This document shows, piece after piece, positions 57,554-64,000 of a stretch of 64,000 bases of DNA; position 1 is the stretch's first letter; every line of letters begins with the position of its first letter. Both the position numbers and the translations under genes were made by a program. Below the pieces are notes generated by a model that was not told where the DNA came from, ran no database searches, and saw nothing but the letters and a program-made list of their open reading frames with translations. The stretch spans positions 248,001-312,000 of IMG/VR virus record IMGVR_UViG_3300034358_000008. One strand, written 5' to 3'.

Positions 57554-57723
57554 TGGCTAAACATAACCGTCATTGGTTTAAGACAAAGTTAAAACACCGC
57601 CTTAAACTAAACGATAAGTACAATCCCAATCGCTGGGTACGGGTATCGTTCAGAGAAACCATTAGTAGTCCTTTCGGGGACTTTCTTAAACGTTGGGCAG
57701 AATACGTAATGAAGGATGACTAA
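57553..57723 (+). CDS. 56-aa basic hypothetical protein
   Basis: MAKHNRHWFK...VMKDD; TAATG coupling at both ends; below ORF-track cutoff. Confidence 0.7.
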   Translation: MAKHNRHWFKTKLKHRLKLNDKYNPNRWVRVSFRETISSPFGDFLKRWAEYVMKDD

Positions 57724-58406
57724 TGCGCAATCAACCACCAAGAGAATTCACTGTTGTAGATATGGCTCGGGCCTTCTGTATTGCTGCTCACGCAGGCGTT
57801 GGACAGAAACGTAAGTACACGGGTGAGGATTACCACCACCATCCTGAGGAAGCCTTACAGATCCTCCTGACTTACTGTGATCCATGCCATGCACAACAAG
57901 CAGCAATCCTGCTACACGACGTCGTTGAAGATACCTCGGTAACACGACAACATATCGCCCAAGTATTCGGTCAAACTGTGTCTACTCTGGTTTGGGGTAT
58001 AACTGACGTATCCCGTAAAGAAGATGGTAACCGGGTCGTCCGTAAACGTCTAGACCGTGAACACATCCTGCGTGGGTGCGATAAGGTTCTGGAGATGAAA
58101 CTTGCCGATTTGATCTCCAACACCCGTTCGATTGCTAAACATGATAAGAAGTTTGCACGGGTGTATCTAGCAGAGAAGATTCTGATCCTATCTGACATGG
58201 TAGATCGGATGGGAGGCACACTGATTTACGAAGAAGCCTGTGAAGTTGCAGCTGCGGCAGGTAAAGAAGTATTTGAAACCCCACTGGAACACTTCACTAT
58301 TTGGGACGAACTTTTCAAAGGACGTGCTGACTATAATGATTTCATGAAAGAAGTTTACCCGGAGATTACCAATGAAGTCCAGAGTGATGACAGCGTCCCA
58401 ACTTAG
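57723..58406 (+). CDS. HD-domain hydrolase, RelA/SpoT small alarmone hydrolase (Mesh1-like)
   Basis: AHAG..QKRK.TGE.Y..HP, LLHDVVEDT, K.AD.ISN. Confidence 0.85.
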   Translation: MRNQPPREFTVVDMARAFCIAAHAGVGQKRKYTGEDYHHHPEEALQILLTYCDPCHAQQAAILLHDVVEDTSVTRQHIAQVFGQTVSTLVWGITDVSRKEDGNRVVRKRLDREHILRGCDKVLEMKLADLISNTRSIAKHDKKFARVYLAEKILILSDMVDRMGGTLIYEEACEVAAAAGKEVFETPLEHFTIWDELFKGRADYNDFMKEVYPEITNEVQSDDSVPT

Positions 58407-59644: not shown

Positions 59645-60084
59645 TGATTGATAAATCTAAGCCGTGGTTTCCAAGTGACTTCCCGCTGGATGAAGTGCTT
59701 GCAGCAATTGAAGATCTTCCTTTCGCTAACGATGCTGAGAACCTCGCTCGTCGGCAGCAGATCGCTGACCAATACGAAACCCGTTTGATTGGACCAGCTA
59801 AGATTTTCTTTGATCTTCGTCAAGACCTAATTAAAGAGATGGATGCTGAATTCCGTATTCATCCTGAGAAGGTGACGATGCATGTGGGTACAGCACTCAT
59901 TAAGTTGATGGGTAGCTCTATTCCACAGACCCTGTTCACTGTGAACGAGTATGCGGTCCCGGTGGTCTGCCGAGATGTACCGACTACACTACTGGAAGAA
60001 GTCCGTCCAGTTAAAACGAACGCTGTGCAAGTGTACTGGGATATGGTAGCTGAAGACAGTGCTGTGCAAGAACCTACTGCCTAG
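59644..60084 (+). CDS. hypothetical protein
   Basis: TAATG coupling. Confidence 0.75.
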   Translation: MIDKSKPWFPSDFPLDEVLAAIEDLPFANDAENLARRQQIADQYETRLIGPAKIFFDLRQDLIKEMDAEFRIHPEKVTMHVGTALIKLMGSSIPQTLFTVNEYAVPVVCRDVPTTLLEEVRPVKTNAVQVYWDMVAEDSAVQEPTA

Positions 60085-60125
60085 CATTATACTGTACGAA
60101 GATCAATATCTCTAAGGTAAATTCA

Positions 60126-60713
60126 ATGTCTATTCTCGCTGACTGGCAAATCCGGGACTTGTGCACTGGCGACAAGCCAATGATCAGTCCGTTCTACGCT
60201 GACAAAATGCGTTACATCGAAGAGGACATTCGTGTTCCCTCGTATGGTCTGTCCAGCTATGGTTATGATATCCGTCTCTCGGATGTTGGACTGAAGCTGT
60301 TCACTGACGTACACTGTATCGAAGTTGATCCACGCAACATCGATCCAAAGATCTACATCGAACCCGTAATCAAATACGCTGACGATGGCGCACCTTACGT
60401 ATCGTTGCCACCTAACGGTTTCCTGTTGGGTCATACACCTGAATGGTTCGACATGCCTAACAACGTGTTGGGTAACTGCTTGGGTAAGTCTACCTATGCA
60501 CGTGGAGCAGTGTCGGTAATCGTTACTCCACTGGAACCAGACTGGAAAGGTAATCTCGTAGTGGAAGTAGTGAACAACTGCAACCTGCCTGTACGGGTTT
60601 ATCTGAACTGTGGTATCGCTCAGGTATTGTTCTTGCAGGGCGAACCATGTGAGTCTGGTTATGGTGATGGTAAATACCAGGGTCAGAAAGGTACACAGGA
60701 CGCTTTGGCGTAA
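60126..60713 (+). CDS. dcd: dCTP deaminase
   Basis: SYGLSSYGYDIRL, GKSTYAR, TPLEPDWKG, GIAQ-x-LF, KYQGQ. Confidence 0.95.
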   Translation: MSILADWQIRDLCTGDKPMISPFYADKMRYIEEDIRVPSYGLSSYGYDIRLSDVGLKLFTDVHCIEVDPRNIDPKIYIEPVIKYADDGAPYVSLPPNGFLLGHTPEWFDMPNNVLGNCLGKSTYARGAVSVIVTPLEPDWKGNLVVEVVNNCNLPVRVYLNCGIAQVLFLQGEPCESGYGDGKYQGQKGTQDALA

Positions 60714-60730
60714 CTGTACAGTATAAAACG

Positions 60731-60757
60731 GAGTCCCTTCGGGGACTCTTTTTATTT
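60731..60757 (+). terminator. intrinsic terminator
   Basis: GAGTCCC-TTCG-GGGACTC + TTTTT. Confidence 0.85.
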
Positions 60758-60772
60758 TTGTCTGAGGCTATT

Positions 60773-61384
60773 ATGCATTTTTACGTATTCACCGACGGTA
60801 AGCCGTTAGAAGTCCATAAGTTCCCGAATATCACTCCTGGATCAGAACAGTTTGAAGTCTGGACACCACCCGTACGGGAGAAACCTTACTTGTGGGAAGG
60901 GGAACACTTCTACGGAATCATGTTCCTAGTCGATAAAGCTCAAGGGTCTGATAAACCTTCAGCTCAGCGTAAGATGCTGAAGATGGTATTGGATCTTGCA
61001 TTCAATAAACCTGAAGATAACTACCCAAGAATGGTACGTGATCTGATCCCACTCTTCCCTGACTACTTTATTGTTATTACTGATCGCGGCATTCGAAGTC
61101 GACACTCAGTAATACTGTCAGGCTGTGGACTAAAGAGGGATTCCGTTCTAACTGTACAATCTCAGGCTGTGGCAACTCAATGCTTCATGAACATCGTTCA
61201 CAAGAACCTGACCAAGAAAGATCTGACTACACAAGAGGCGTTCCAAAATGCATTCAACACCGGGATCTTCGACGAAAGCGAATACTACTATGCTCAAGTA
61301 CCTAAGTGGTATACCTTCGCGCAAGAACATTACGGACCGTCAGACGATGCAACAGTTACACGAGCTAGGCTCGAGTTTGACTAA
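60773..61384 (+). CDS. hypothetical protein
   Basis: GAGG RBS before ATG 60773. Confidence 0.75.
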   Translation: MHFYVFTDGKPLEVHKFPNITPGSEQFEVWTPPVREKPYLWEGEHFYGIMFLVDKAQGSDKPSAQRKMLKMVLDLAFNKPEDNYPRMVRDLIPLFPDYFIVITDRGIRSRHSVILSGCGLKRDSVLTVQSQAVATQCFMNIVHKNLTKKDLTTQEAFQNAFNTGIFDESEYYYAQVPKWYTFAQEHYGPSDDATVTRARLEFD

Positions 61385-62303
61385 CTACGATCTGATGTAT
61401 CACATCTTCAAAGAACCTGTTATCGCCGATGTGCTCTATGATTTAATGAAACGTGATTACGAAAGGATGTGCAGAGAATACCCTGGGGTAGCTAACTCCA
61501 TTCCTAGGGCGCGAAGTATTAGAGATCAGATGTTAACTAACGGTAAAAGCACCAAGCATGATTTCCCAATGTTACCACTGCGGGAAGTCCATGATGTATC
61601 TGGTGTGAAACGTTGGTTTGAAATGTTTGATGCAAAAGACATCGTGGTTGAACCCTCACTAGTAGGTGTTGAAGTTGAGTTGGTATATGTAGGTGGCACA
61701 CTGCATAAAGCTGTTAACCGTGGAGACAGTCTAGAAGGTCTAGACATTACCATGAACATGTACCTCGTTAACGGTGTCCCGCAACAGATCCCTGAAACCG
61801 AACGTGTGAATATCCATGGTAAGGTAGTCATCTCACGAATGGACCATATGGAAACTATGGGTTGGGAACATTGTTCTCCTCAGATGGTGGTGGCACACCA
61901 TTTGATGAATCAACCCGCCCATGGCACTACCGCGGTAAGACCCGAGTGTTTAGAGTTCATTCCTCACACCGTCAACATCCCAGGGTGTACGTTTGATCTG
62001 ATGGAATTGAGAATGGTTCTGATGGCATGGGACTTTGCGCTTACTCCAACAATCGTATTAAACGGTAAGTGCCGTGAAGTAGGTTCCATCGAAGAATACA
62101 TAGAAGCCTTTGAAGAGATACACATCAAAGACTACATCTATCCGATTGAGGGTCTAACTTTCCGAGTGAATGAAACACAACGTCGTTTGGAATTAGGTTA
62201 CACATCTCGATACCCCGAGTGGGCATTCAAATACATCAAAGGGAAATCCAATGAAGGATCTAGCACCAGCGGTAGTACAGGCACTGAGAGTGGGTTACGC
62301 TGA
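61347..62303 (+). CDS. NAD-dependent ligase adenylation-domain paralog lacking the catalytic lysine
   Basis: EPSLVG replaces E-x-KLDG; LVY..G.L..AV.RGD, YPIEGLTF.V, PEWA retained; ends at the end of the adenylation domain. Confidence 0.8.
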   Translation: MQQLHELGSSLTNYDLMYHIFKEPVIADVLYDLMKRDYERMCREYPGVANSIPRARSIRDQMLTNGKSTKHDFPMLPLREVHDVSGVKRWFEMFDAKDIVVEPSLVGVEVELVYVGGTLHKAVNRGDSLEGLDITMNMYLVNGVPQQIPETERVNIHGKVVISRMDHMETMGWEHCSPQMVVAHHLMNQPAHGTTAVRPECLEFIPHTVNIPGCTFDLMELRMVLMAWDFALTPTIVLNGKCREVGSIEEYIEAFEEIHIKDYIYPIEGLTFRVNETQRRLELGYTSRYPEWAFKYIKGKSNEGSSTSGSTGTESGLR

Positions 62304-64000
62304 AGCCTGCTCAGAACTGAACGAGTTGAACTACCAGTATCACGTTAACGACGTTTCGGTTATCCCTGATCCAGAATACGATCTGAAGTTCCGTCAGTTA
62401 GTTGATATAGAAAAGCAATACCCATGGTTAATCGTTCCAGCTTCTCCAACTCAAACCGTTGGTCACGCTATTACGTCGGGCCACTTCCAACCATTGAAGC
62501 ATCGGTTGTCGATGTTGAGTCTGGGTAACACGTTCACTGCTTATGAAGCTGTGGATTGGAGTATTGACATTTCTGGTGATCCTGAAACCCAAGGACTAGA
62601 AGTTCGAGGTGAATGGAAATTAGATGGCTTGAGTCTGAGTCTGGTTTACCGTAAAGGTCGACTGCTATATGCCGTTACTCGTGGTGATGGTGAGACAGGT
62701 GAGAACGTAACGATCAATGCCTTGCAAATCCAAGGTATCCCTAAGGTACTCAAACATTGGACCTCGGTGTACACTTCGATCCGTGGTGAAGTCGTTGTTA
62801 ATCTAGCCGACTACAATGCTATTAATGACGCTTTGCTTGAAGCGGGTAAGAAACCATTCGCTAACCCACGTAACTATGCCGCTGGTAGTTTGCGTCAGAA
62901 AGACCCAGCTATTACAGCTGAGCGTAAATTGATATTTGTGGGTTACTCGATAGATCATGAAGATGATGATACTGACCGTGATTGGTATAATGATCAGGAA
63001 ACTCTAATCAAGAATGGTTTTGAGACAGCAGCTATTCCAGATAAGTTGAATCATAGCCTCGAGGGTATTATTCAAGGGTGGCCAGAGTTCATTGAGAAGA
63101 TGCAAACGTTGCGTAGTGCCCAGCCCTATGAAGTCGATGGTATCGTCTTTAAAGTGGTTAAGCATGCTCACCGTAAATTCCTCGGTATGACTTCTCGTGC
63201 ACCTAAGTGGGCAACGGCATTTAAGTTCCCTGCCTCTGAAGGCGTAACGCCCCTTAAAGATGTCGAGTACCAAGTTGGTCGTACTGGTCGACTGACCCCA
63301 GTTGCACGTGTAGAACCCGTTCACGTTCATGGCACCATGATTTCTAACGTGTCATTGCATAACCGCAACGAGGTTGCTCGTCTCCAGCTCTATAAAGGCT
63401 GTAGCGTACAAATCAAACGAGCAGGGGATGTCATCCCTTACGTAATGGGTACGACTGTCGCACACACTGATCAAGAGCTTTATGAACCGTTGACACATTG
63501 TCCAGTCTGTAACACTAAGACTTCTATTGTCCTCAGTAAGGATGGTAAAGAAACTGACAATTGCGATAATCGAGACTGCTATGGTCGCCAGATTGCACAT
63601 CTTGAATATTGCATGGATCGTGATGTCTTCAACATTAAAGGACTGGGGCCAGCTGTTATTAAGCTGCTCCATCAAGTTGGGCATATCACTGCGTATCAAC
63701 CAGTAAAGATCTTTGATGTAACATTCATGCAACTAATCGGCGTTGGGTTGTCTGAGCTGGAAGCAGAGAAACTGTTGCGTGCAATTGCAGTCGCTGCCGG
63801 CGATCTGGATATGACTCGGATGGTAAGGTCTTTTGGTATTGATGGTATTGCTAAGAACTCCTCTGAGAAACTAGCCATCCACTTCATGAACCTTGAGGCA
63901 CTATCTACTGCAACAGTAGATGATCTGATACATGTAGAAGACATCGGTAAGATTGGTGCTGCTTCTATCTTCGAATACTTTGATGAGGATCGTTCTAAAC
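62251..64000 (+). CDS. ligA: NAD-dependent DNA ligase (3'-truncated by window)
   Basis: D.EYD, EWKLDG (Lys at 62617), TRGDG, RGEV, NPRN-x-AAGSLRQ, DGIVFK, VGRTG, RAGDVIP, CPVC zinc finger; missing from ORF track because no stop in window. Confidence 0.95.
   Translation, partial: MKDLAPAVVQALRVGYAEACSELNELNYQYHVNDVSVIPDPEYDLKFRQLVDIEKQYPWLIVPASPTQTVGHAITSGHFQPLKHRLSMLSLGNTFTAYEAVDWSIDISGDPETQGLEVRGEWKLDGLSLSLVYRKGRLLYAVTRGDGETGENVTINALQIQGIPKVLKHWTSVYTSIRGEVVVNLADYNAINDALLEAGKKPFANPRNYAAGSLRQKDPAITAERKLIFVGYSIDHEDDDTDRDWYNDQETLIKNGFETAAIPDKLNHSLEGIIQGWPEFIEKMQTLRSAQPYEVDGIVFKVVKHAHRKFLGMTSRAPKWATAFKFPASEGVTPLKDVEYQVGRTGRLTPVARVEPVHVHGTMISNVSLHNRNEVARLQLYKGCSVQIKRAGDVIPYVMGTTVAHTDQELYEPLTHCPVCNTKTSIVLSKDGKETDNCDNRDCYGRQIAHLEYCMDRDVFNIKGLGPAVIKLLHQVGHITAYQPVKIFDVTFMQLIGVGLSELEAEKLLRAIAVAAGDLDMTRMVRSFGIDGIAKNSSEKLAIHFMNLEALSTATVDDLIHVEDIGKIGAASIFEYFDEDRSK

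What the first reader, a model, noticed from the sequence alone, without database searches (positions are those of the whole stretch)
61347..62303. Catalytically dead NAD-ligase adenylation domain encoded next to the intact ligase
Seen: the 318-aa protein aligns motif by motif with the downstream ligase (VEPSLVGVEVELVYVGGTLHKAVNRGD versus GEWKLDGLSLSLVYRKGRLLYAVTRGD; YPIEGLTFRV versus YEVDGIVFKV; PEWA versus PKWA). The adenylated Lys is Ser (codon 61656) and the motif I Asp is Val. The N-terminal Ia subdomain (YH…P-x-I-x-D-x-x-YD) is kept. There is no OB, zinc-finger, HhH or BRCT region. The frame is intact despite high divergence. Established: Ia binds the NMN part of NAD+; without the Lys no ligase-AMP forms. 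Inference: a maintained pseudo-enzyme, e.g. NAD+/NMN binder or sensor, decoy for a ligase-targeting defence, or partner that localises the ligase.
Basis: partly seen in the sequence, partly recalled or inferred. Interest (0 to 1): 0.6.

Follow-up and report, generated by a model that had tools for sequence, protein, structure and literature searches.

The report
Dead ligase copy beside phage ligase
A jumbo phage of the nucleus-forming group carries, directly in front of its working NAD-dependent DNA ligase gene, a conserved half-length copy that has lost every catalytic residue yet is kept by selection, so it probably does a non-enzymatic job that is still unknown.

Summary
Window 61347-62303 (+) encodes a 318-aa protein with only the Ia and nucleotidyltransferase domains of NAD-dependent ligase (Pfam PF01653 E 3e-23; AlphaFold pLDDT 86; Foldseek E 1e-23 to LigA adenylation domains). 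The motif I lysine is Ser104 (codon 61656) and the aspartate is Val106. An intact 707-aa ligase starts 53 nt before its stop codon.

It is a small family, not a one-off. I found 23 members, about six clusters at 50% identity among 1.84 billion representatives. All come from relatives of Pseudomonas phages 201phi2-1 (gp332), Phabio and Viktualia. In 18 aligned members the equivalents of K115, D117, E173, R208 and K314 are never kept; 20 full-length ligases keep them. One Phabio-like member outside that set has Lys at the motif I position but lacks the other catalytic residues.

dN/dS is 0.09-0.15, like the real ligase, and 37 positions are newly constrained. In 16 of 16 loci the short gene overlaps the ligase start, and the ligase's ribosome-binding site lies inside it.

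It is a maintained pseudo-ligase from one ancient duplication, probably a non-catalytic accessory factor. NMN or NAD binding cannot be the family-wide role, because the Ia signature is lost in one still-selected clade. Partner and function are untested. The closest precedent is poxvirus A20.

The parts
61347..62303 (+). Short LigA-like ORF (318 aa, P0001), the pseudo-ligase. Alternative starts are 61248 (longest ORF, 351 aa) and 61395 (302 aa, a database gene call).
   Evidence: The AF2 model has pLDDT 85.9. Foldseek top hits are LigA adenylation domains at E about 1e-23.
61347..61541 (+). Ia-like helical subdomain (residues about 1-65). It carries Y18, H19, D28, Y31 and D32, the equivalents of the LigA NMN-binding residues. 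The family-specific F21-K22 and the 'ARSIxxQ' linker that replaces LigA's SPTQ also lie here.
   Evidence: Helices 2-19, 28-44 and 46-51 are seen in the model.
61650..61667 (+). Remnant of motif I. E102-P-S104-L-V106-G107 stands in place of E-x-K-x-D-G. The adenylated Lys is Ser (codon 61656) and the Asp is Val.
61542..62246 (+). Nucleotidyltransferase-like domain (residues about 66-300) with degenerate motifs. Motif III IHGKV replaces IRGEV. The R200/R208 loop is lost. Motif IV EGLTFRV replaces DGIVFKV. In motif V the Lys is Ile297.
62247..62303 (+). Low-complexity, predicted-disordered C-terminal tail (residues 301-318) and the stop codon. This stretch overlaps the start of the ligase gene in another frame.
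   Evidence: pLDDT is below 50 for residues 301-318. Tail length varies between orthologues. The overlap is tabulated.
62238..62246 (+). Purine-rich Shine-Dalgarno-like element (AAAGGGAAA) for the ligase gene, embedded in the 3' end of the short ORF. Most of the other 15 loci have an AGGA/AGGG/GAGG-type purine-rich element at the same distance; it is weak or absent in L027.
62251..64000 (+). Intact NAD-dependent DNA ligase. It is 707 aa in the full record and ends at window-equivalent 64374, beyond the window. It has KxDG (K123) and all catalytic motifs, plus OB, a Cys4 zinc finger, HhH and BRCT.
60758..61384 (+). Upstream ORF of 208 aa with no known family. It overlaps the start of the short ORF and is conserved at this position in most phages that carry the pseudo-ligase. 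It probably belongs to the same transcription unit.
   Evidence: The AF2 model is poor (pLDDT 58).
60730..60749 (+). Terminator-like hairpin with a T-run, just after the dCTP deaminase gene (60126-60713). It marks the probable upstream boundary of the unit made of the 208-aa ORF, the pseudo-ligase and the ligase.
   Evidence: No terminator-like site lies between 60750 and 64000 on the + strand.

Best explanation
The ORF encodes a catalytically dead paralogue of the phage's own NAD-dependent DNA ligase, a 'pseudo-ligase'. One ancient tandem duplication of the ligase's N-terminal Ia and nucleotidyltransferase module produced it, in an ancestor of the 201phi2-1/Phabio-like nucleus-forming jumbo phages. 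The copy lost the lysine nucleophile and the other nucleotidyl-transfer, adenosine-binding and nick-contact residues. It acquired a new set of constrained residues and has since been kept under purifying selection.

It is made together with the real ligase. The two genes lie on one strand with no terminator between them. The short gene's stop lies 4-53 nt inside the ligase gene, and the ligase's ribosome-binding site is embedded in the short gene. Translation of the two is therefore probably coupled.

Most likely it acts without catalysis, as an accessory, regulatory or scaffolding factor of phage DNA joining or replication that binds a partner through its family-specific surface. The partner could be the ligase or another replication protein.

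Shown here: homology, fold, loss of catalytic residues, selection, single origin, and strict gene linkage. Inferred: non-enzymatic action, translational coupling, and the identity of the partner. The confidence given (0.5) is for the whole statement including the accessory role; for the shown part alone (dead, selected, ligase-linked paralogue) I would say about 0.9.
For: Homology and fold:
- PF01653 E 2.9e-23 with no other ligase domain.
- A family profile matches solved LigA adenylation domains from residue about 5 to 301, E 1e-30.
- AF2 pLDDT 85.9; Foldseek E about 1e-23 to LigA Ia+NTase structures.

Loss of chemistry: in 18 aligned short proteins the equivalents of K115, D117, E173, R208 and K314 are kept 0 times. 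All 20 full-length ligases keep K115, D117, E173 and K314, and 19 of 20 keep R208. R136, Y225, D285 and K290 are variable in the short proteins.

Selection:
- NG86 dN/dS is 0.085 (dS 1.03) and 0.15 (dS 0.48) for the short gene, against 0.109 and 0.052 for the ligase in the same phage pairs.
- 59 columns are conserved only in full-length ligases and 37 only in the short family.
- No member has a broken frame.

Single origin: the short clade is monophyletic at 100/100 on a long stem. It nests inside the ligases of Pseudomonas/Ralstonia-type chimalliviruses at 99/96.

Linkage: in 16 of 16 loci the short gene lies directly upstream of a 678-710-aa ligase on the same strand. The overlap is 4-53 nt, and most loci have a purine-rich element 5-13 nt before the ligase ATG. 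No terminator lies between the two genes in the window.

Precedent: poxvirus A20/OPG148, a replication processivity factor, is an inactivated NAD-ligase derivative (bioRxiv 10.1101/2022.11.22.517515). The ligase of the related phage PhiPA3 localises inside the phage nucleus (PMC10643120).
Against: There is no direct evidence for any partner or any phenotype. The only complex prediction (short protein plus ligase residues 1-600) gave no verdict, so it neither supports nor refutes binding.

Related phages such as PhiPA3, PS119XW, Psa21, RP12, Goslar and Moabite manage with the ligase alone. The factor is therefore not generally required for chimallivirus ligase function.

Retention of the NMN-binding signature in most members hints at a small-molecule function instead. 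The 37 newly constrained positions include polar and charged residues (R56, D72, H120, K121, R153, E249, E250, E291) that could equally form a new active site.

No expression data exist for this uncultured phage.
Confidence: 0.5

Rival explanations
1. NMN or NAD+ binder or sensor. The retained Ia subdomain binds the nicotinamide nucleotide, and the protein reports or buffers NAD+/NMN levels. It might, for example, protect or tune the NAD-dependent ligase when the host depletes NAD+.
For: - The window protein keeps all five Ia residues (Y18, H19, D28, Y31, D32). Across 18 members they are kept in 13, 11 (plus 2 Tyr), 13 (plus 4 Glu), 17 and 13.
- In LigA these residues serve only the reaction with NAD+ (my own knowledge of Sriskanda and Shuman's mutagenesis).
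- Solved structures include LigA adenylation domains with NAD+ or NMN, and a genetically encoded sensor built on a bacterial ligase (entry titles for 1ta8/1tae and 8jyd).
- The phage also encodes a NAMPT-like enzyme and a PRPP-synthetase-like enzyme about 9 kb downstream.
Against: - The 201phi2-1/Viktualia/L014 clade and P0017/P0020 have lost most of the Ia signature, yet are still conserved (201phi2-1 versus Viktualia: pN 0.18, pS 0.79).
- Adenosine-pocket residues are replaced and variable, so canonical NAD+ binding is unlikely. At most NMN could bind.
- NAMPT occurs equally in phages without the short gene.
- Stoichiometric buffering of a millimolar metabolite by a protein is implausible (inference).
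Confidence: 0.2
2. Neo-enzyme. The LigA scaffold has acquired a different active site and catalyses another reaction on a nucleotide or nucleic acid, without a lysyl-AMP intermediate.
For: 37 positions are constrained only in the short family. Many are polar or charged: R56, Q61, D72, H120, K121, D133, Y139, Q146, R153, E249, E250, E282, T286, E291. dN/dS is as low as for the true enzyme. One Phabio-like member (P0024) has Lys, and Phabio has Arg, at the motif I position.
Against: No known nucleotidyltransferase of this superfamily works without the motif I lysine (established knowledge). No similarity to any other enzyme family was found.
Confidence: 0.1
3. Decoy or inhibitor. The dead domain mimics the ligase. 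It could absorb a host factor or defence system that recognises or inhibits the phage ligase, or it could interfere with the host LigA.
For: It keeps the overall shape of the ligase N-terminal half and would be produced alongside the ligase. Its distribution is patchy and clade-restricted, as is typical of accessory or counter-defence genes.
Against: At 21-25% identity to its own ligase, with a largely different set of conserved positions, it is a poor mimic. I know of no defence system triggered by or aimed at NAD-ligase, and none turned up in the papers read. The gene sits in a replication and nucleotide-metabolism block, not among early anti-defence genes.
Confidence: 0.08
4. Not a separate functional protein. 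It could be a decaying duplicate, or the first part of a frameshift or read-through fusion with the ligase.
For: The two ORFs overlap, and the ligase is in the +1 frame relative to the short ORF in 15 of 16 loci.
Against: All 23 members have intact frames of about 280-343 aa and low dN/dS. The overlap varies from 4 to 53 nt with no conserved slippery sequence, and one locus has a plain ATGA overlap in the other frame. The ligase has its own ATG, ribosome-binding site and complete Ia domain.
Confidence: 0.03

Closest known systems
Bacterial and phage NAD+-dependent DNA ligase LigA, adenylation module (Ia + nucleotidyltransferase; Pfam PF22745 + PF01653; e.g. PDB 2owo, 1tae, 3jsl)
   Same: It has the same two-subdomain fold, and sequence homology is detectable. 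Shared structural residues include H71, P74, L76, G107, Y114, A122, G126, G131, T135, G158, G269, V274, L283-G284, S287 and P290. The Ia Y-H...D..Y-D signature is kept in the window protein.
   Different: There is no motif I Lys or Asp, no motif III Glu, no R200/R208 loop and no motif V Lys, and motif IV is degenerate. OB, Zn, HhH and BRCT domains are absent. It cannot form ligase-AMP by the known mechanism.
Split (heterodimeric) NAD+ ligase of T5-like phages, subunit A (PHROG 3359; PDB 9hu3/9i5i 'PR1 phage heterodimeric DNA ligase')
   Same: It is a stand-alone protein of about 300-340 aa made of Ia + NTase only, encoded next to a gene carrying the remaining ligase domains. It matches PHROG 3359 at E 1.6e-30 and 9hu3_A by fold.
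   Different: In the split ligase the short subunit is the catalytic half and the partner lacks an NTase domain (my own knowledge plus the PDB entry title). Here the neighbour is a complete ligase and the short protein has no catalytic residues.
Poxvirus A20 (OPG148), DNA polymerase processivity and scaffold factor
   Same: It is a viral protein derived from bacterial-type NAD-dependent ligase with a disrupted active site, exapted for a non-enzymatic role in replication (bioRxiv 10.1101/2022.11.22.517515). The host virus is also a large DNA virus that replicates in a dedicated compartment.
   Different: A20 has diverged beyond sequence recognition and is not encoded next to an active NAD-ligase. 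Its partners (D4, E9) are known. Here homology is still obvious, the gene is coupled to the active paralogue, and no partner is known. The two have independent origins.
Paralogous 'prozyme' pseudoenzymes (for example trypanosomatid AdoMetDC prozyme)
   Same: This is a catalytically dead paralogue retained by selection alongside the active enzyme (my own knowledge). It is the model for the proposed accessory role.
   Different: Heteromer formation and activation are demonstrated for prozymes. Nothing of the kind is shown here (one search gave no verdict).

Membership tests
NAD+-dependent DNA ligase (LigA, EC 6.5.1.2), functional enzyme | Ia + nucleotidyltransferase fold (PF22745/PF01653) | tested here: met
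   PF01653 scores 83 bits against a cut-off of 27. Nlig-Ia is below its cut-off (13 bits). Profile-to-PDB alignment covers residues 5-301. AF2 plus Foldseek gives E about 1e-23.
NAD+-dependent DNA ligase (LigA, EC 6.5.1.2), functional enzyme | Motif I KxDG with the lysine that becomes adenylylated | tested here: not met
   The window protein reads S104-L-V106-G. Among 18 aligned family members 0 have Lys and 0 have Asp, against 20 of 20 full-length ligases. One extra member, P0024, has K-V-T-G but lacks the other motifs.
NAD+-dependent DNA ligase (LigA, EC 6.5.1.2), functional enzyme | Motifs III, IV and V and the nick-contact arginines (E173, R200, R208, D285, K290, K314 equivalents) | tested here: not met
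   The window protein has K159, Q179, M187, E268, R273 and I297 at these positions. Family-wide, E173, R208 and K314 equivalents are kept 0 of 18 times.
NAD+-dependent DNA ligase (LigA, EC 6.5.1.2), functional enzyme | OB fold, Cys4 zinc finger, HhH (and usually BRCT) domains that clamp nicked DNA | tested here: not met
   There are no Pfam hits beyond PF01653 and Nlig-Ia. The protein ends about 20 residues after the motif V position.
Split heterodimeric NAD+ ligase of T5-like phages (subunit A) | The short Ia+NTase subunit carries the catalytic motifs, and the partner gene supplies OB/Zn/HhH without its own NTase | tested here: not met
   The short protein lacks the catalytic motifs. The neighbouring gene is a complete ligase with its own Ia and NTase domains. 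I did not inspect the motif content of 9hu3_A itself.
Virus-encoded inactivated NAD-ligase derivatives (poxvirus A20-like exaptation) | Ligase fold with a disrupted active site, retained by selection | tested here: met
Virus-encoded inactivated NAD-ligase derivatives (poxvirus A20-like exaptation) | Physical role in the replisome (binding to the polymerase or other replication proteins) | not testable with these tools
   Only one complex prediction was allowed. It tested the ligase, not the polymerase, and gave no verdict.
NMN/NAD+-binding LigA Ia domain | Y22, H23, D32, Y35 and D36 equivalents present | tested here: inconclusive
   All five are present in the window protein. They are kept in 11-17 of 18 members depending on the position. 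Most are lost in the 201phi2-1 clade and P0017. Binding itself was not testable.

The most novel reading that the evidence does not exclude
The pseudo-ligase may be a dedicated non-catalytic subunit of the chimallivirus DNA-joining or replication machinery, convergent with poxvirus A20. It would be made in fixed ratio with the ligase by translational coupling. In most lineages it would still read NMN or NAD+ through its Ia domain, so that nick sealing inside the phage nucleus is tuned to the NAD+ supply. This would be the first ligase-derived regulatory subunit described in a bacteriophage.
Probability: 0.15. Interest if true: 0.75.

Novelty: new variant of a known kind. Interest (0 to 1): 0.5.

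Why it matters
Public records label the orthologues (201phi2-1 gp332, Phabio gp331, a Viktualia CDS) 'NAD-dependent DNA ligase'. That is a functional misannotation, because these proteins cannot be ligases by the known chemistry.

Dead paralogues kept next to their active enzyme often turn out to be regulators or scaffolds. Here one sits in the replication gene block of nucleus-forming jumbo phages, whose replication machinery is only now being worked out.

Two members come from cultivable phages with genetic tools (201phi2-1 and Phabio on Pseudomonas), so the question can be tested directly. A positive result would give a second, independent case of a large DNA virus recycling an NAD-ligase for a non-enzymatic role, after poxvirus A20.

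The family is small and clade-restricted, so the general impact is moderate.

Tried and rejected
- Complex prediction of the short protein (residues 1-300) with ligase residues 1-600, using my own alignments: score 0.00, 'no answer'. I do not use it as evidence either way.
- AlphaFold model of the upstream 208-aa ORF: pLDDT 58, too poor for a fold search. Pfam and PHROGs found nothing for it.
- Megablast of window 60000-64000 against the phage collection: no match. Relatives were found only at the protein level.
- Literature: no paper in the held library mentions gp332 of 201phi2-1. The 201phi2-1 transcriptome paper has no usable ligase text and no held supplements. The AVAST type 5 paper, the RNase H-clamp preprint and the core-genome preprint say nothing about a second ligase-like gene. 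A search for the T5-like heterodimeric ligase paper found nothing relevant.
- Co-occurrence with NAD+ salvage genes: the phage has a NAMPT-like and a PRPP-synthetase-like gene and no PF01467 NMNAT. NAMPT is also present in chimalliviruses without the short gene. I found no link.
- Net charge and pI of the short proteins do not differ from the ligase N-terminal halves, so there is no sign of a DNA mimic or a strongly basic DNA binder.
- Expression: the only runs holding this DNA are DNA runs, and the best is a peat metagenome that may be the source. No RNA evidence exists, and I did not lay reads.
- The sigma-70 promoter scan was below shuffled expectation and is uninformative for these phages.
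- Frameshift fusion and decaying duplicate were considered and rejected (see rival explanations).
- dN/dS for most pairs could not be used because dS is saturated. Only the two or three closest pairs are quoted.
Full report
**1. What is in the sequence**

The + strand has an ORF from 61248 to 62303. Read from the ATG at 61347 it gives 318 aa (P0001). A second ORF starts at 62251, 53 nt before the first one stops, and runs out of the window.

The window is bases 248001-312000 of a 324,912-bp virus record judged complete. In that record the second ORF is 707 aa long. Pfam finds in it the full set of NAD-ligase domains: Nlig-Ia, adenylation, OB and HhH. A Cys4 zinc finger and a C-terminal region that I take for the BRCT domain are visible in the full translation; Pfam hits BRCT in the orthologous ligases.

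The short protein matches only the adenylation domain (PF01653, E 2.9e-23, residues 67-296), plus the Ia domain weakly. It also matches PHROG 3869, 'NAD-dependent DNA ligase', at E 6e-39.

Codons 61644-61673 read VVEPSLVGVE. Codon 61656 is therefore Ser104 where the ligase has its adenylated Lys, and Val106 replaces the Asp.

**2. Fold**

I built an AlphaFold2 model on an alignment of 19 relatives. Its mean pLDDT is 85.9. Only residues 192-194 and the tail 301-318 are poorly predicted.

Foldseek against the PDB puts LigA adenylation-domain structures first, at E about 1e-23 and covering about 320 columns. ATP-dependent ligases follow far behind. A profile of the family aligns with solved LigA fragments from the first Ia helix to the end of the NTase domain.

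**3. It is a family, and a narrow one**

tblastn against phage genomes hit only ligase genes, mostly of nucleus-forming jumbo phages. Three of these phages have the same two-gene arrangement:
- 201phi2-1: gp332 (308 aa) and gp333
- Viktualia: two adjacent CDS
- Phabio: gp331 and gp332

In all three the block follows the dCTP deaminase gene, as in the window. PhiPA3, PS119XW, Psa21, RP12, Goslar, Moabite and a Vibrio phage have the full-length ligase only.

Three further searches sized the family:
- The word-index protein search found 12 metagenomic orthologues at 45-76% identity, all 281-343 aa with PF01653 only.
- A scan of IMG/VR found two further loci besides 201phi2-1 and Phabio.
- The exhaustive profile search of 1.84 billion cluster representatives returned six representatives of 300-339 aa, at 232-481 bits. 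The score then drops sharply to 161 bits, where ordinary 580-700-aa ligases begin.

The family is therefore about six clusters at 50% identity. I saw 23 sequences in all. The source of the window is probably a peat metagenome.

**4. Loss of the chemistry is complete and ancestral**

I aligned 18 short proteins with 20 full-length ligases. These were the 11 paired ligases, 7 solo ligases from other jumbo phages, and 2 ligases from smaller phages. The table gives the counts. E. coli LigA numbering is from my own knowledge of Shuman's mutagenesis work; the counts are from the tool.

| LigA position | Short proteins (18) | Full-length ligases (20) |
|---|---|---|
| K115 (motif I Lys) | 0 kept (Y/A/S/N/R) | 20 kept |
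| D117 | 0 kept | 20 kept |
| E173 (motif III) | 0 kept | 20 kept |
| R208 | 0 kept | 19 kept |
| K314 (motif V) | 0 kept | 20 kept |
| R136 | 8 kept | 20 kept |
| Y225 (stacks on adenine) | 1 kept (mostly His) | 20 kept |
| D285 | 9 kept | 20 kept |
| K290 | 2 kept | 20 kept |

Five more divergent representatives from the big search show the same pattern. One of them, the Phabio-like P0024, has Lys at the motif I position (K-V-T-G). It lacks the R136, E173, D285, K290 and K314 equivalents.

By the established three-step mechanism of this superfamily, none of these proteins can form ligase-AMP.

**5. It is kept by selection and has new constraints**

Nei-Gojobori estimates on codon alignments are usable only for the closest pairs, because dS is saturated elsewhere.

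| Phage pair | Gene | dN/dS | dS |
|---|---|---|---|
| L005-L006 | short | 0.085 | 1.03 |
| L005-L006 | ligase | 0.109 | 0.84 |
| L007-L008 | short | 0.150 | 0.48 |
| L007-L008 | ligase | 0.052 | 0.18 |

For 201phi2-1 against Viktualia, the short gene has pN 0.18 and pS 0.79.

No member has a stop or frameshift.

Column by column, 59 positions are conserved at 85% or more only in the full-length ligases. These include the catalytic and contact residues. 23 positions are conserved with the same residue in both groups and form the structural core. 37 positions are conserved only in the short family. Examples are F21-K22 in Ia, the linker A55-R56-x-I58-x-x-Q61 that replaces SPTQ, D72-F73, P103, E111, H120-K121, D133, Y139, Q146, R153, P212-G213, W228, E249-E250, E282, Y285-T286 and E291.

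This is the pattern of a protein that changed function, not of one that is decaying.

**6. Origin**

I built a maximum-likelihood tree of 38 adenylation modules (LG+C20+F+G4). The short proteins form one clade at 100/100 on a stem of 1.63 changes per site. That clade nests inside the ligases of the Pseudomonas/Ralstonia-type chimalliviruses at 99/96.

The nominal sister is the PhiPA3 ligase (97/86). The program flags long-branch effects, so I take only two points as shown: a single origin, and descent from a chimallivirus ligase. The exact donor and the order of later losses are not resolved.

**7. Linkage to the real ligase**

Context is known for 16 loci: the window, L005-L010, L013, L014, L026-L029, 201phi2-1, Viktualia and Phabio. 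In all 16 the short gene lies directly upstream of a 678-710-aa ligase gene on the same strand, and its stop falls 4-53 nt inside the ligase gene.

The 25 nt before the ligase ATG hold a purine-rich element in most loci: AAAGGGAAA in the window at 62238-62246, and AGAGGAA or AAAGGA elsewhere. It is weak or absent in L027. Where present, the ligase's ribosome-binding site lies within the short ORF.

In the window a strong terminator-like hairpin follows the dCTP deaminase gene (60730-60749), and none occurs between there and the window end. The 208-aa ORF at 60758-61384, the pseudo-ligase and the ligase therefore probably form one transcription unit, with coupled translation. This last step is inferred.

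**8. What it probably does**

The shown facts are a dead active site, selection, new constraints and obligatory co-expression with the active paralogue. They fit the general behaviour of pseudoenzyme paralogues, which act as partners, regulators or scaffolds.

The nearest precedent within this very fold is poxvirus A20, a replication processivity and scaffold factor recently recognised as an inactivated bacterial-type NAD-ligase (bioRxiv 10.1101/2022.11.22.517515). The ligase of the related phage PhiPA3 works inside the phage nucleus (PMC10643120).

I therefore rank a non-catalytic accessory role in DNA joining or replication first. I could not identify the partner. The one complex prediction allowed, against the ligase, returned no verdict.

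**9. The NAD/NMN idea**

The window protein keeps all five Ia residues that LigA uses for the NMN half of NAD+, and most members do too. Ia alone can hold NMN in LigA (my own knowledge of the E. faecalis structures; entry titles).

Two facts argue against this as the family's core function. First, the 201phi2-1/Viktualia/L014 clade has R-D in place of Y-H and N or Q in place of the last Asp, and P0017/P0020 have lost most of the five as well, yet these proteins remain conserved. Second, the adenosine side of the pocket is not conserved in any lineage.

NMN binding may be an additional property in the window's lineage. It cannot be what the whole family is selected for.

The phage encodes a NAMPT-like enzyme and a PRPP-synthetase-like enzyme about 9 kb further on. 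Phages without the short gene do so too.

**10. Comparison with what is known, and novelty**

The protein belongs evolutionarily to PF01653, but it fails every functional criterion of a ligase.

It has the domain make-up of subunit A of the split T5-type ligase (PHROG 3359, PDB 9hu3). There, however, the short subunit is the catalytic one and the partner has no NTase domain.

Public records call the orthologues 'NAD-dependent DNA ligase'. I found no paper that discusses them.

I rate it a new variant of a known kind: a virus-encoded inactivated enzyme paralogue, here the first ligase-derived one I can find in a bacteriophage. Interest is moderate, because the family is small and the function is still inferred.

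**11. Limits**

- The E. coli residue numbers and the roles of individual LigA residues come from my own knowledge, not from a tool.
- The start codon (61347 versus 61395 or 61248) is chosen on conservation only.
- dN/dS rests on two or three pairs.

Noticed in passing
window 60758-61384 (+): A 208-aa ORF of unknown family overlaps the start of the pseudo-ligase gene by 38 nt. Recognisable homologues (28-43% identity) occupy the same slot in the metagenomic relatives and Phabio. It is absent from 201phi2-1. The ORFs at that slot in PhiPA3, Psa21 and PS119XW do not align convincingly. It may be a third member of the module.
   Followed up: partly
window 60730-60749 (+): A strong terminator-like hairpin (8-bp stem, 5 G-C pairs, then a T-run) lies directly after the dCTP deaminase gene. 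It suggests a transcription-unit boundary just before the block of the 208-aa ORF, the pseudo-ligase and the ligase.
   Followed up: no
own genome G000:C1 about 319042-321673 (outside the window; L025 30-914 and 925-2661): A PRPP-synthetase-like gene and a 578-aa NAMPT-like gene (PF04095) lie about 9 kb downstream of the ligase. No PF01467-type NMN adenylyltransferase was found in the genome. NAMPT homologues are widespread in related jumbo phages, with or without the pseudo-ligase.
   Followed up: partly
L007 6001-6933 versus L008 683-1558: Two metagenomic relatives have ligases that are 98% identical, but their pseudo-ligases are only 88% identical. The differences are concentrated in the last third of the protein. 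This looks like a recombination mosaic within the short gene.
   Followed up: no
L006 1078-2022: In one relative a 314-aa ORF with a weak HNH_3 hit is inserted between the dCTP deaminase gene and the 211-aa ORF. It is probably a homing endonuclease.
   Followed up: no
P0024 (L028 4001-4990) and Phabio gp331 (L003 3956-4954): The Phabio-like branch has Lys (P0024, K-V-T-G) or Arg (Phabio, R-H-T-G) at the motif I nucleophile position, although the other catalytic motifs are gone. This is either a remnant of the ancestral state or a reversion.
   Followed up: partly
window 61395 versus 61347: The gene call held in the protein database starts the pseudo-ligase at Met17 (302 aa), which cuts off the first Ia helix. 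Orthologues conserve the upstream residues, so the longer form is more likely. RefSeq and GenBank name the orthologues 'NAD-dependent DNA ligase', which overstates their function.
   Followed up: partly
window 57723-58406 (+) and L005 1-958: The block upstream holds an HD_4-type metal-dependent phosphohydrolase. In a close relative it also holds Thg1-like and weak DprA-like ORFs. Together these form a conserved nucleotide and nucleic-acid metabolism cluster that leads up to the ligase pair.
   Followed up: no
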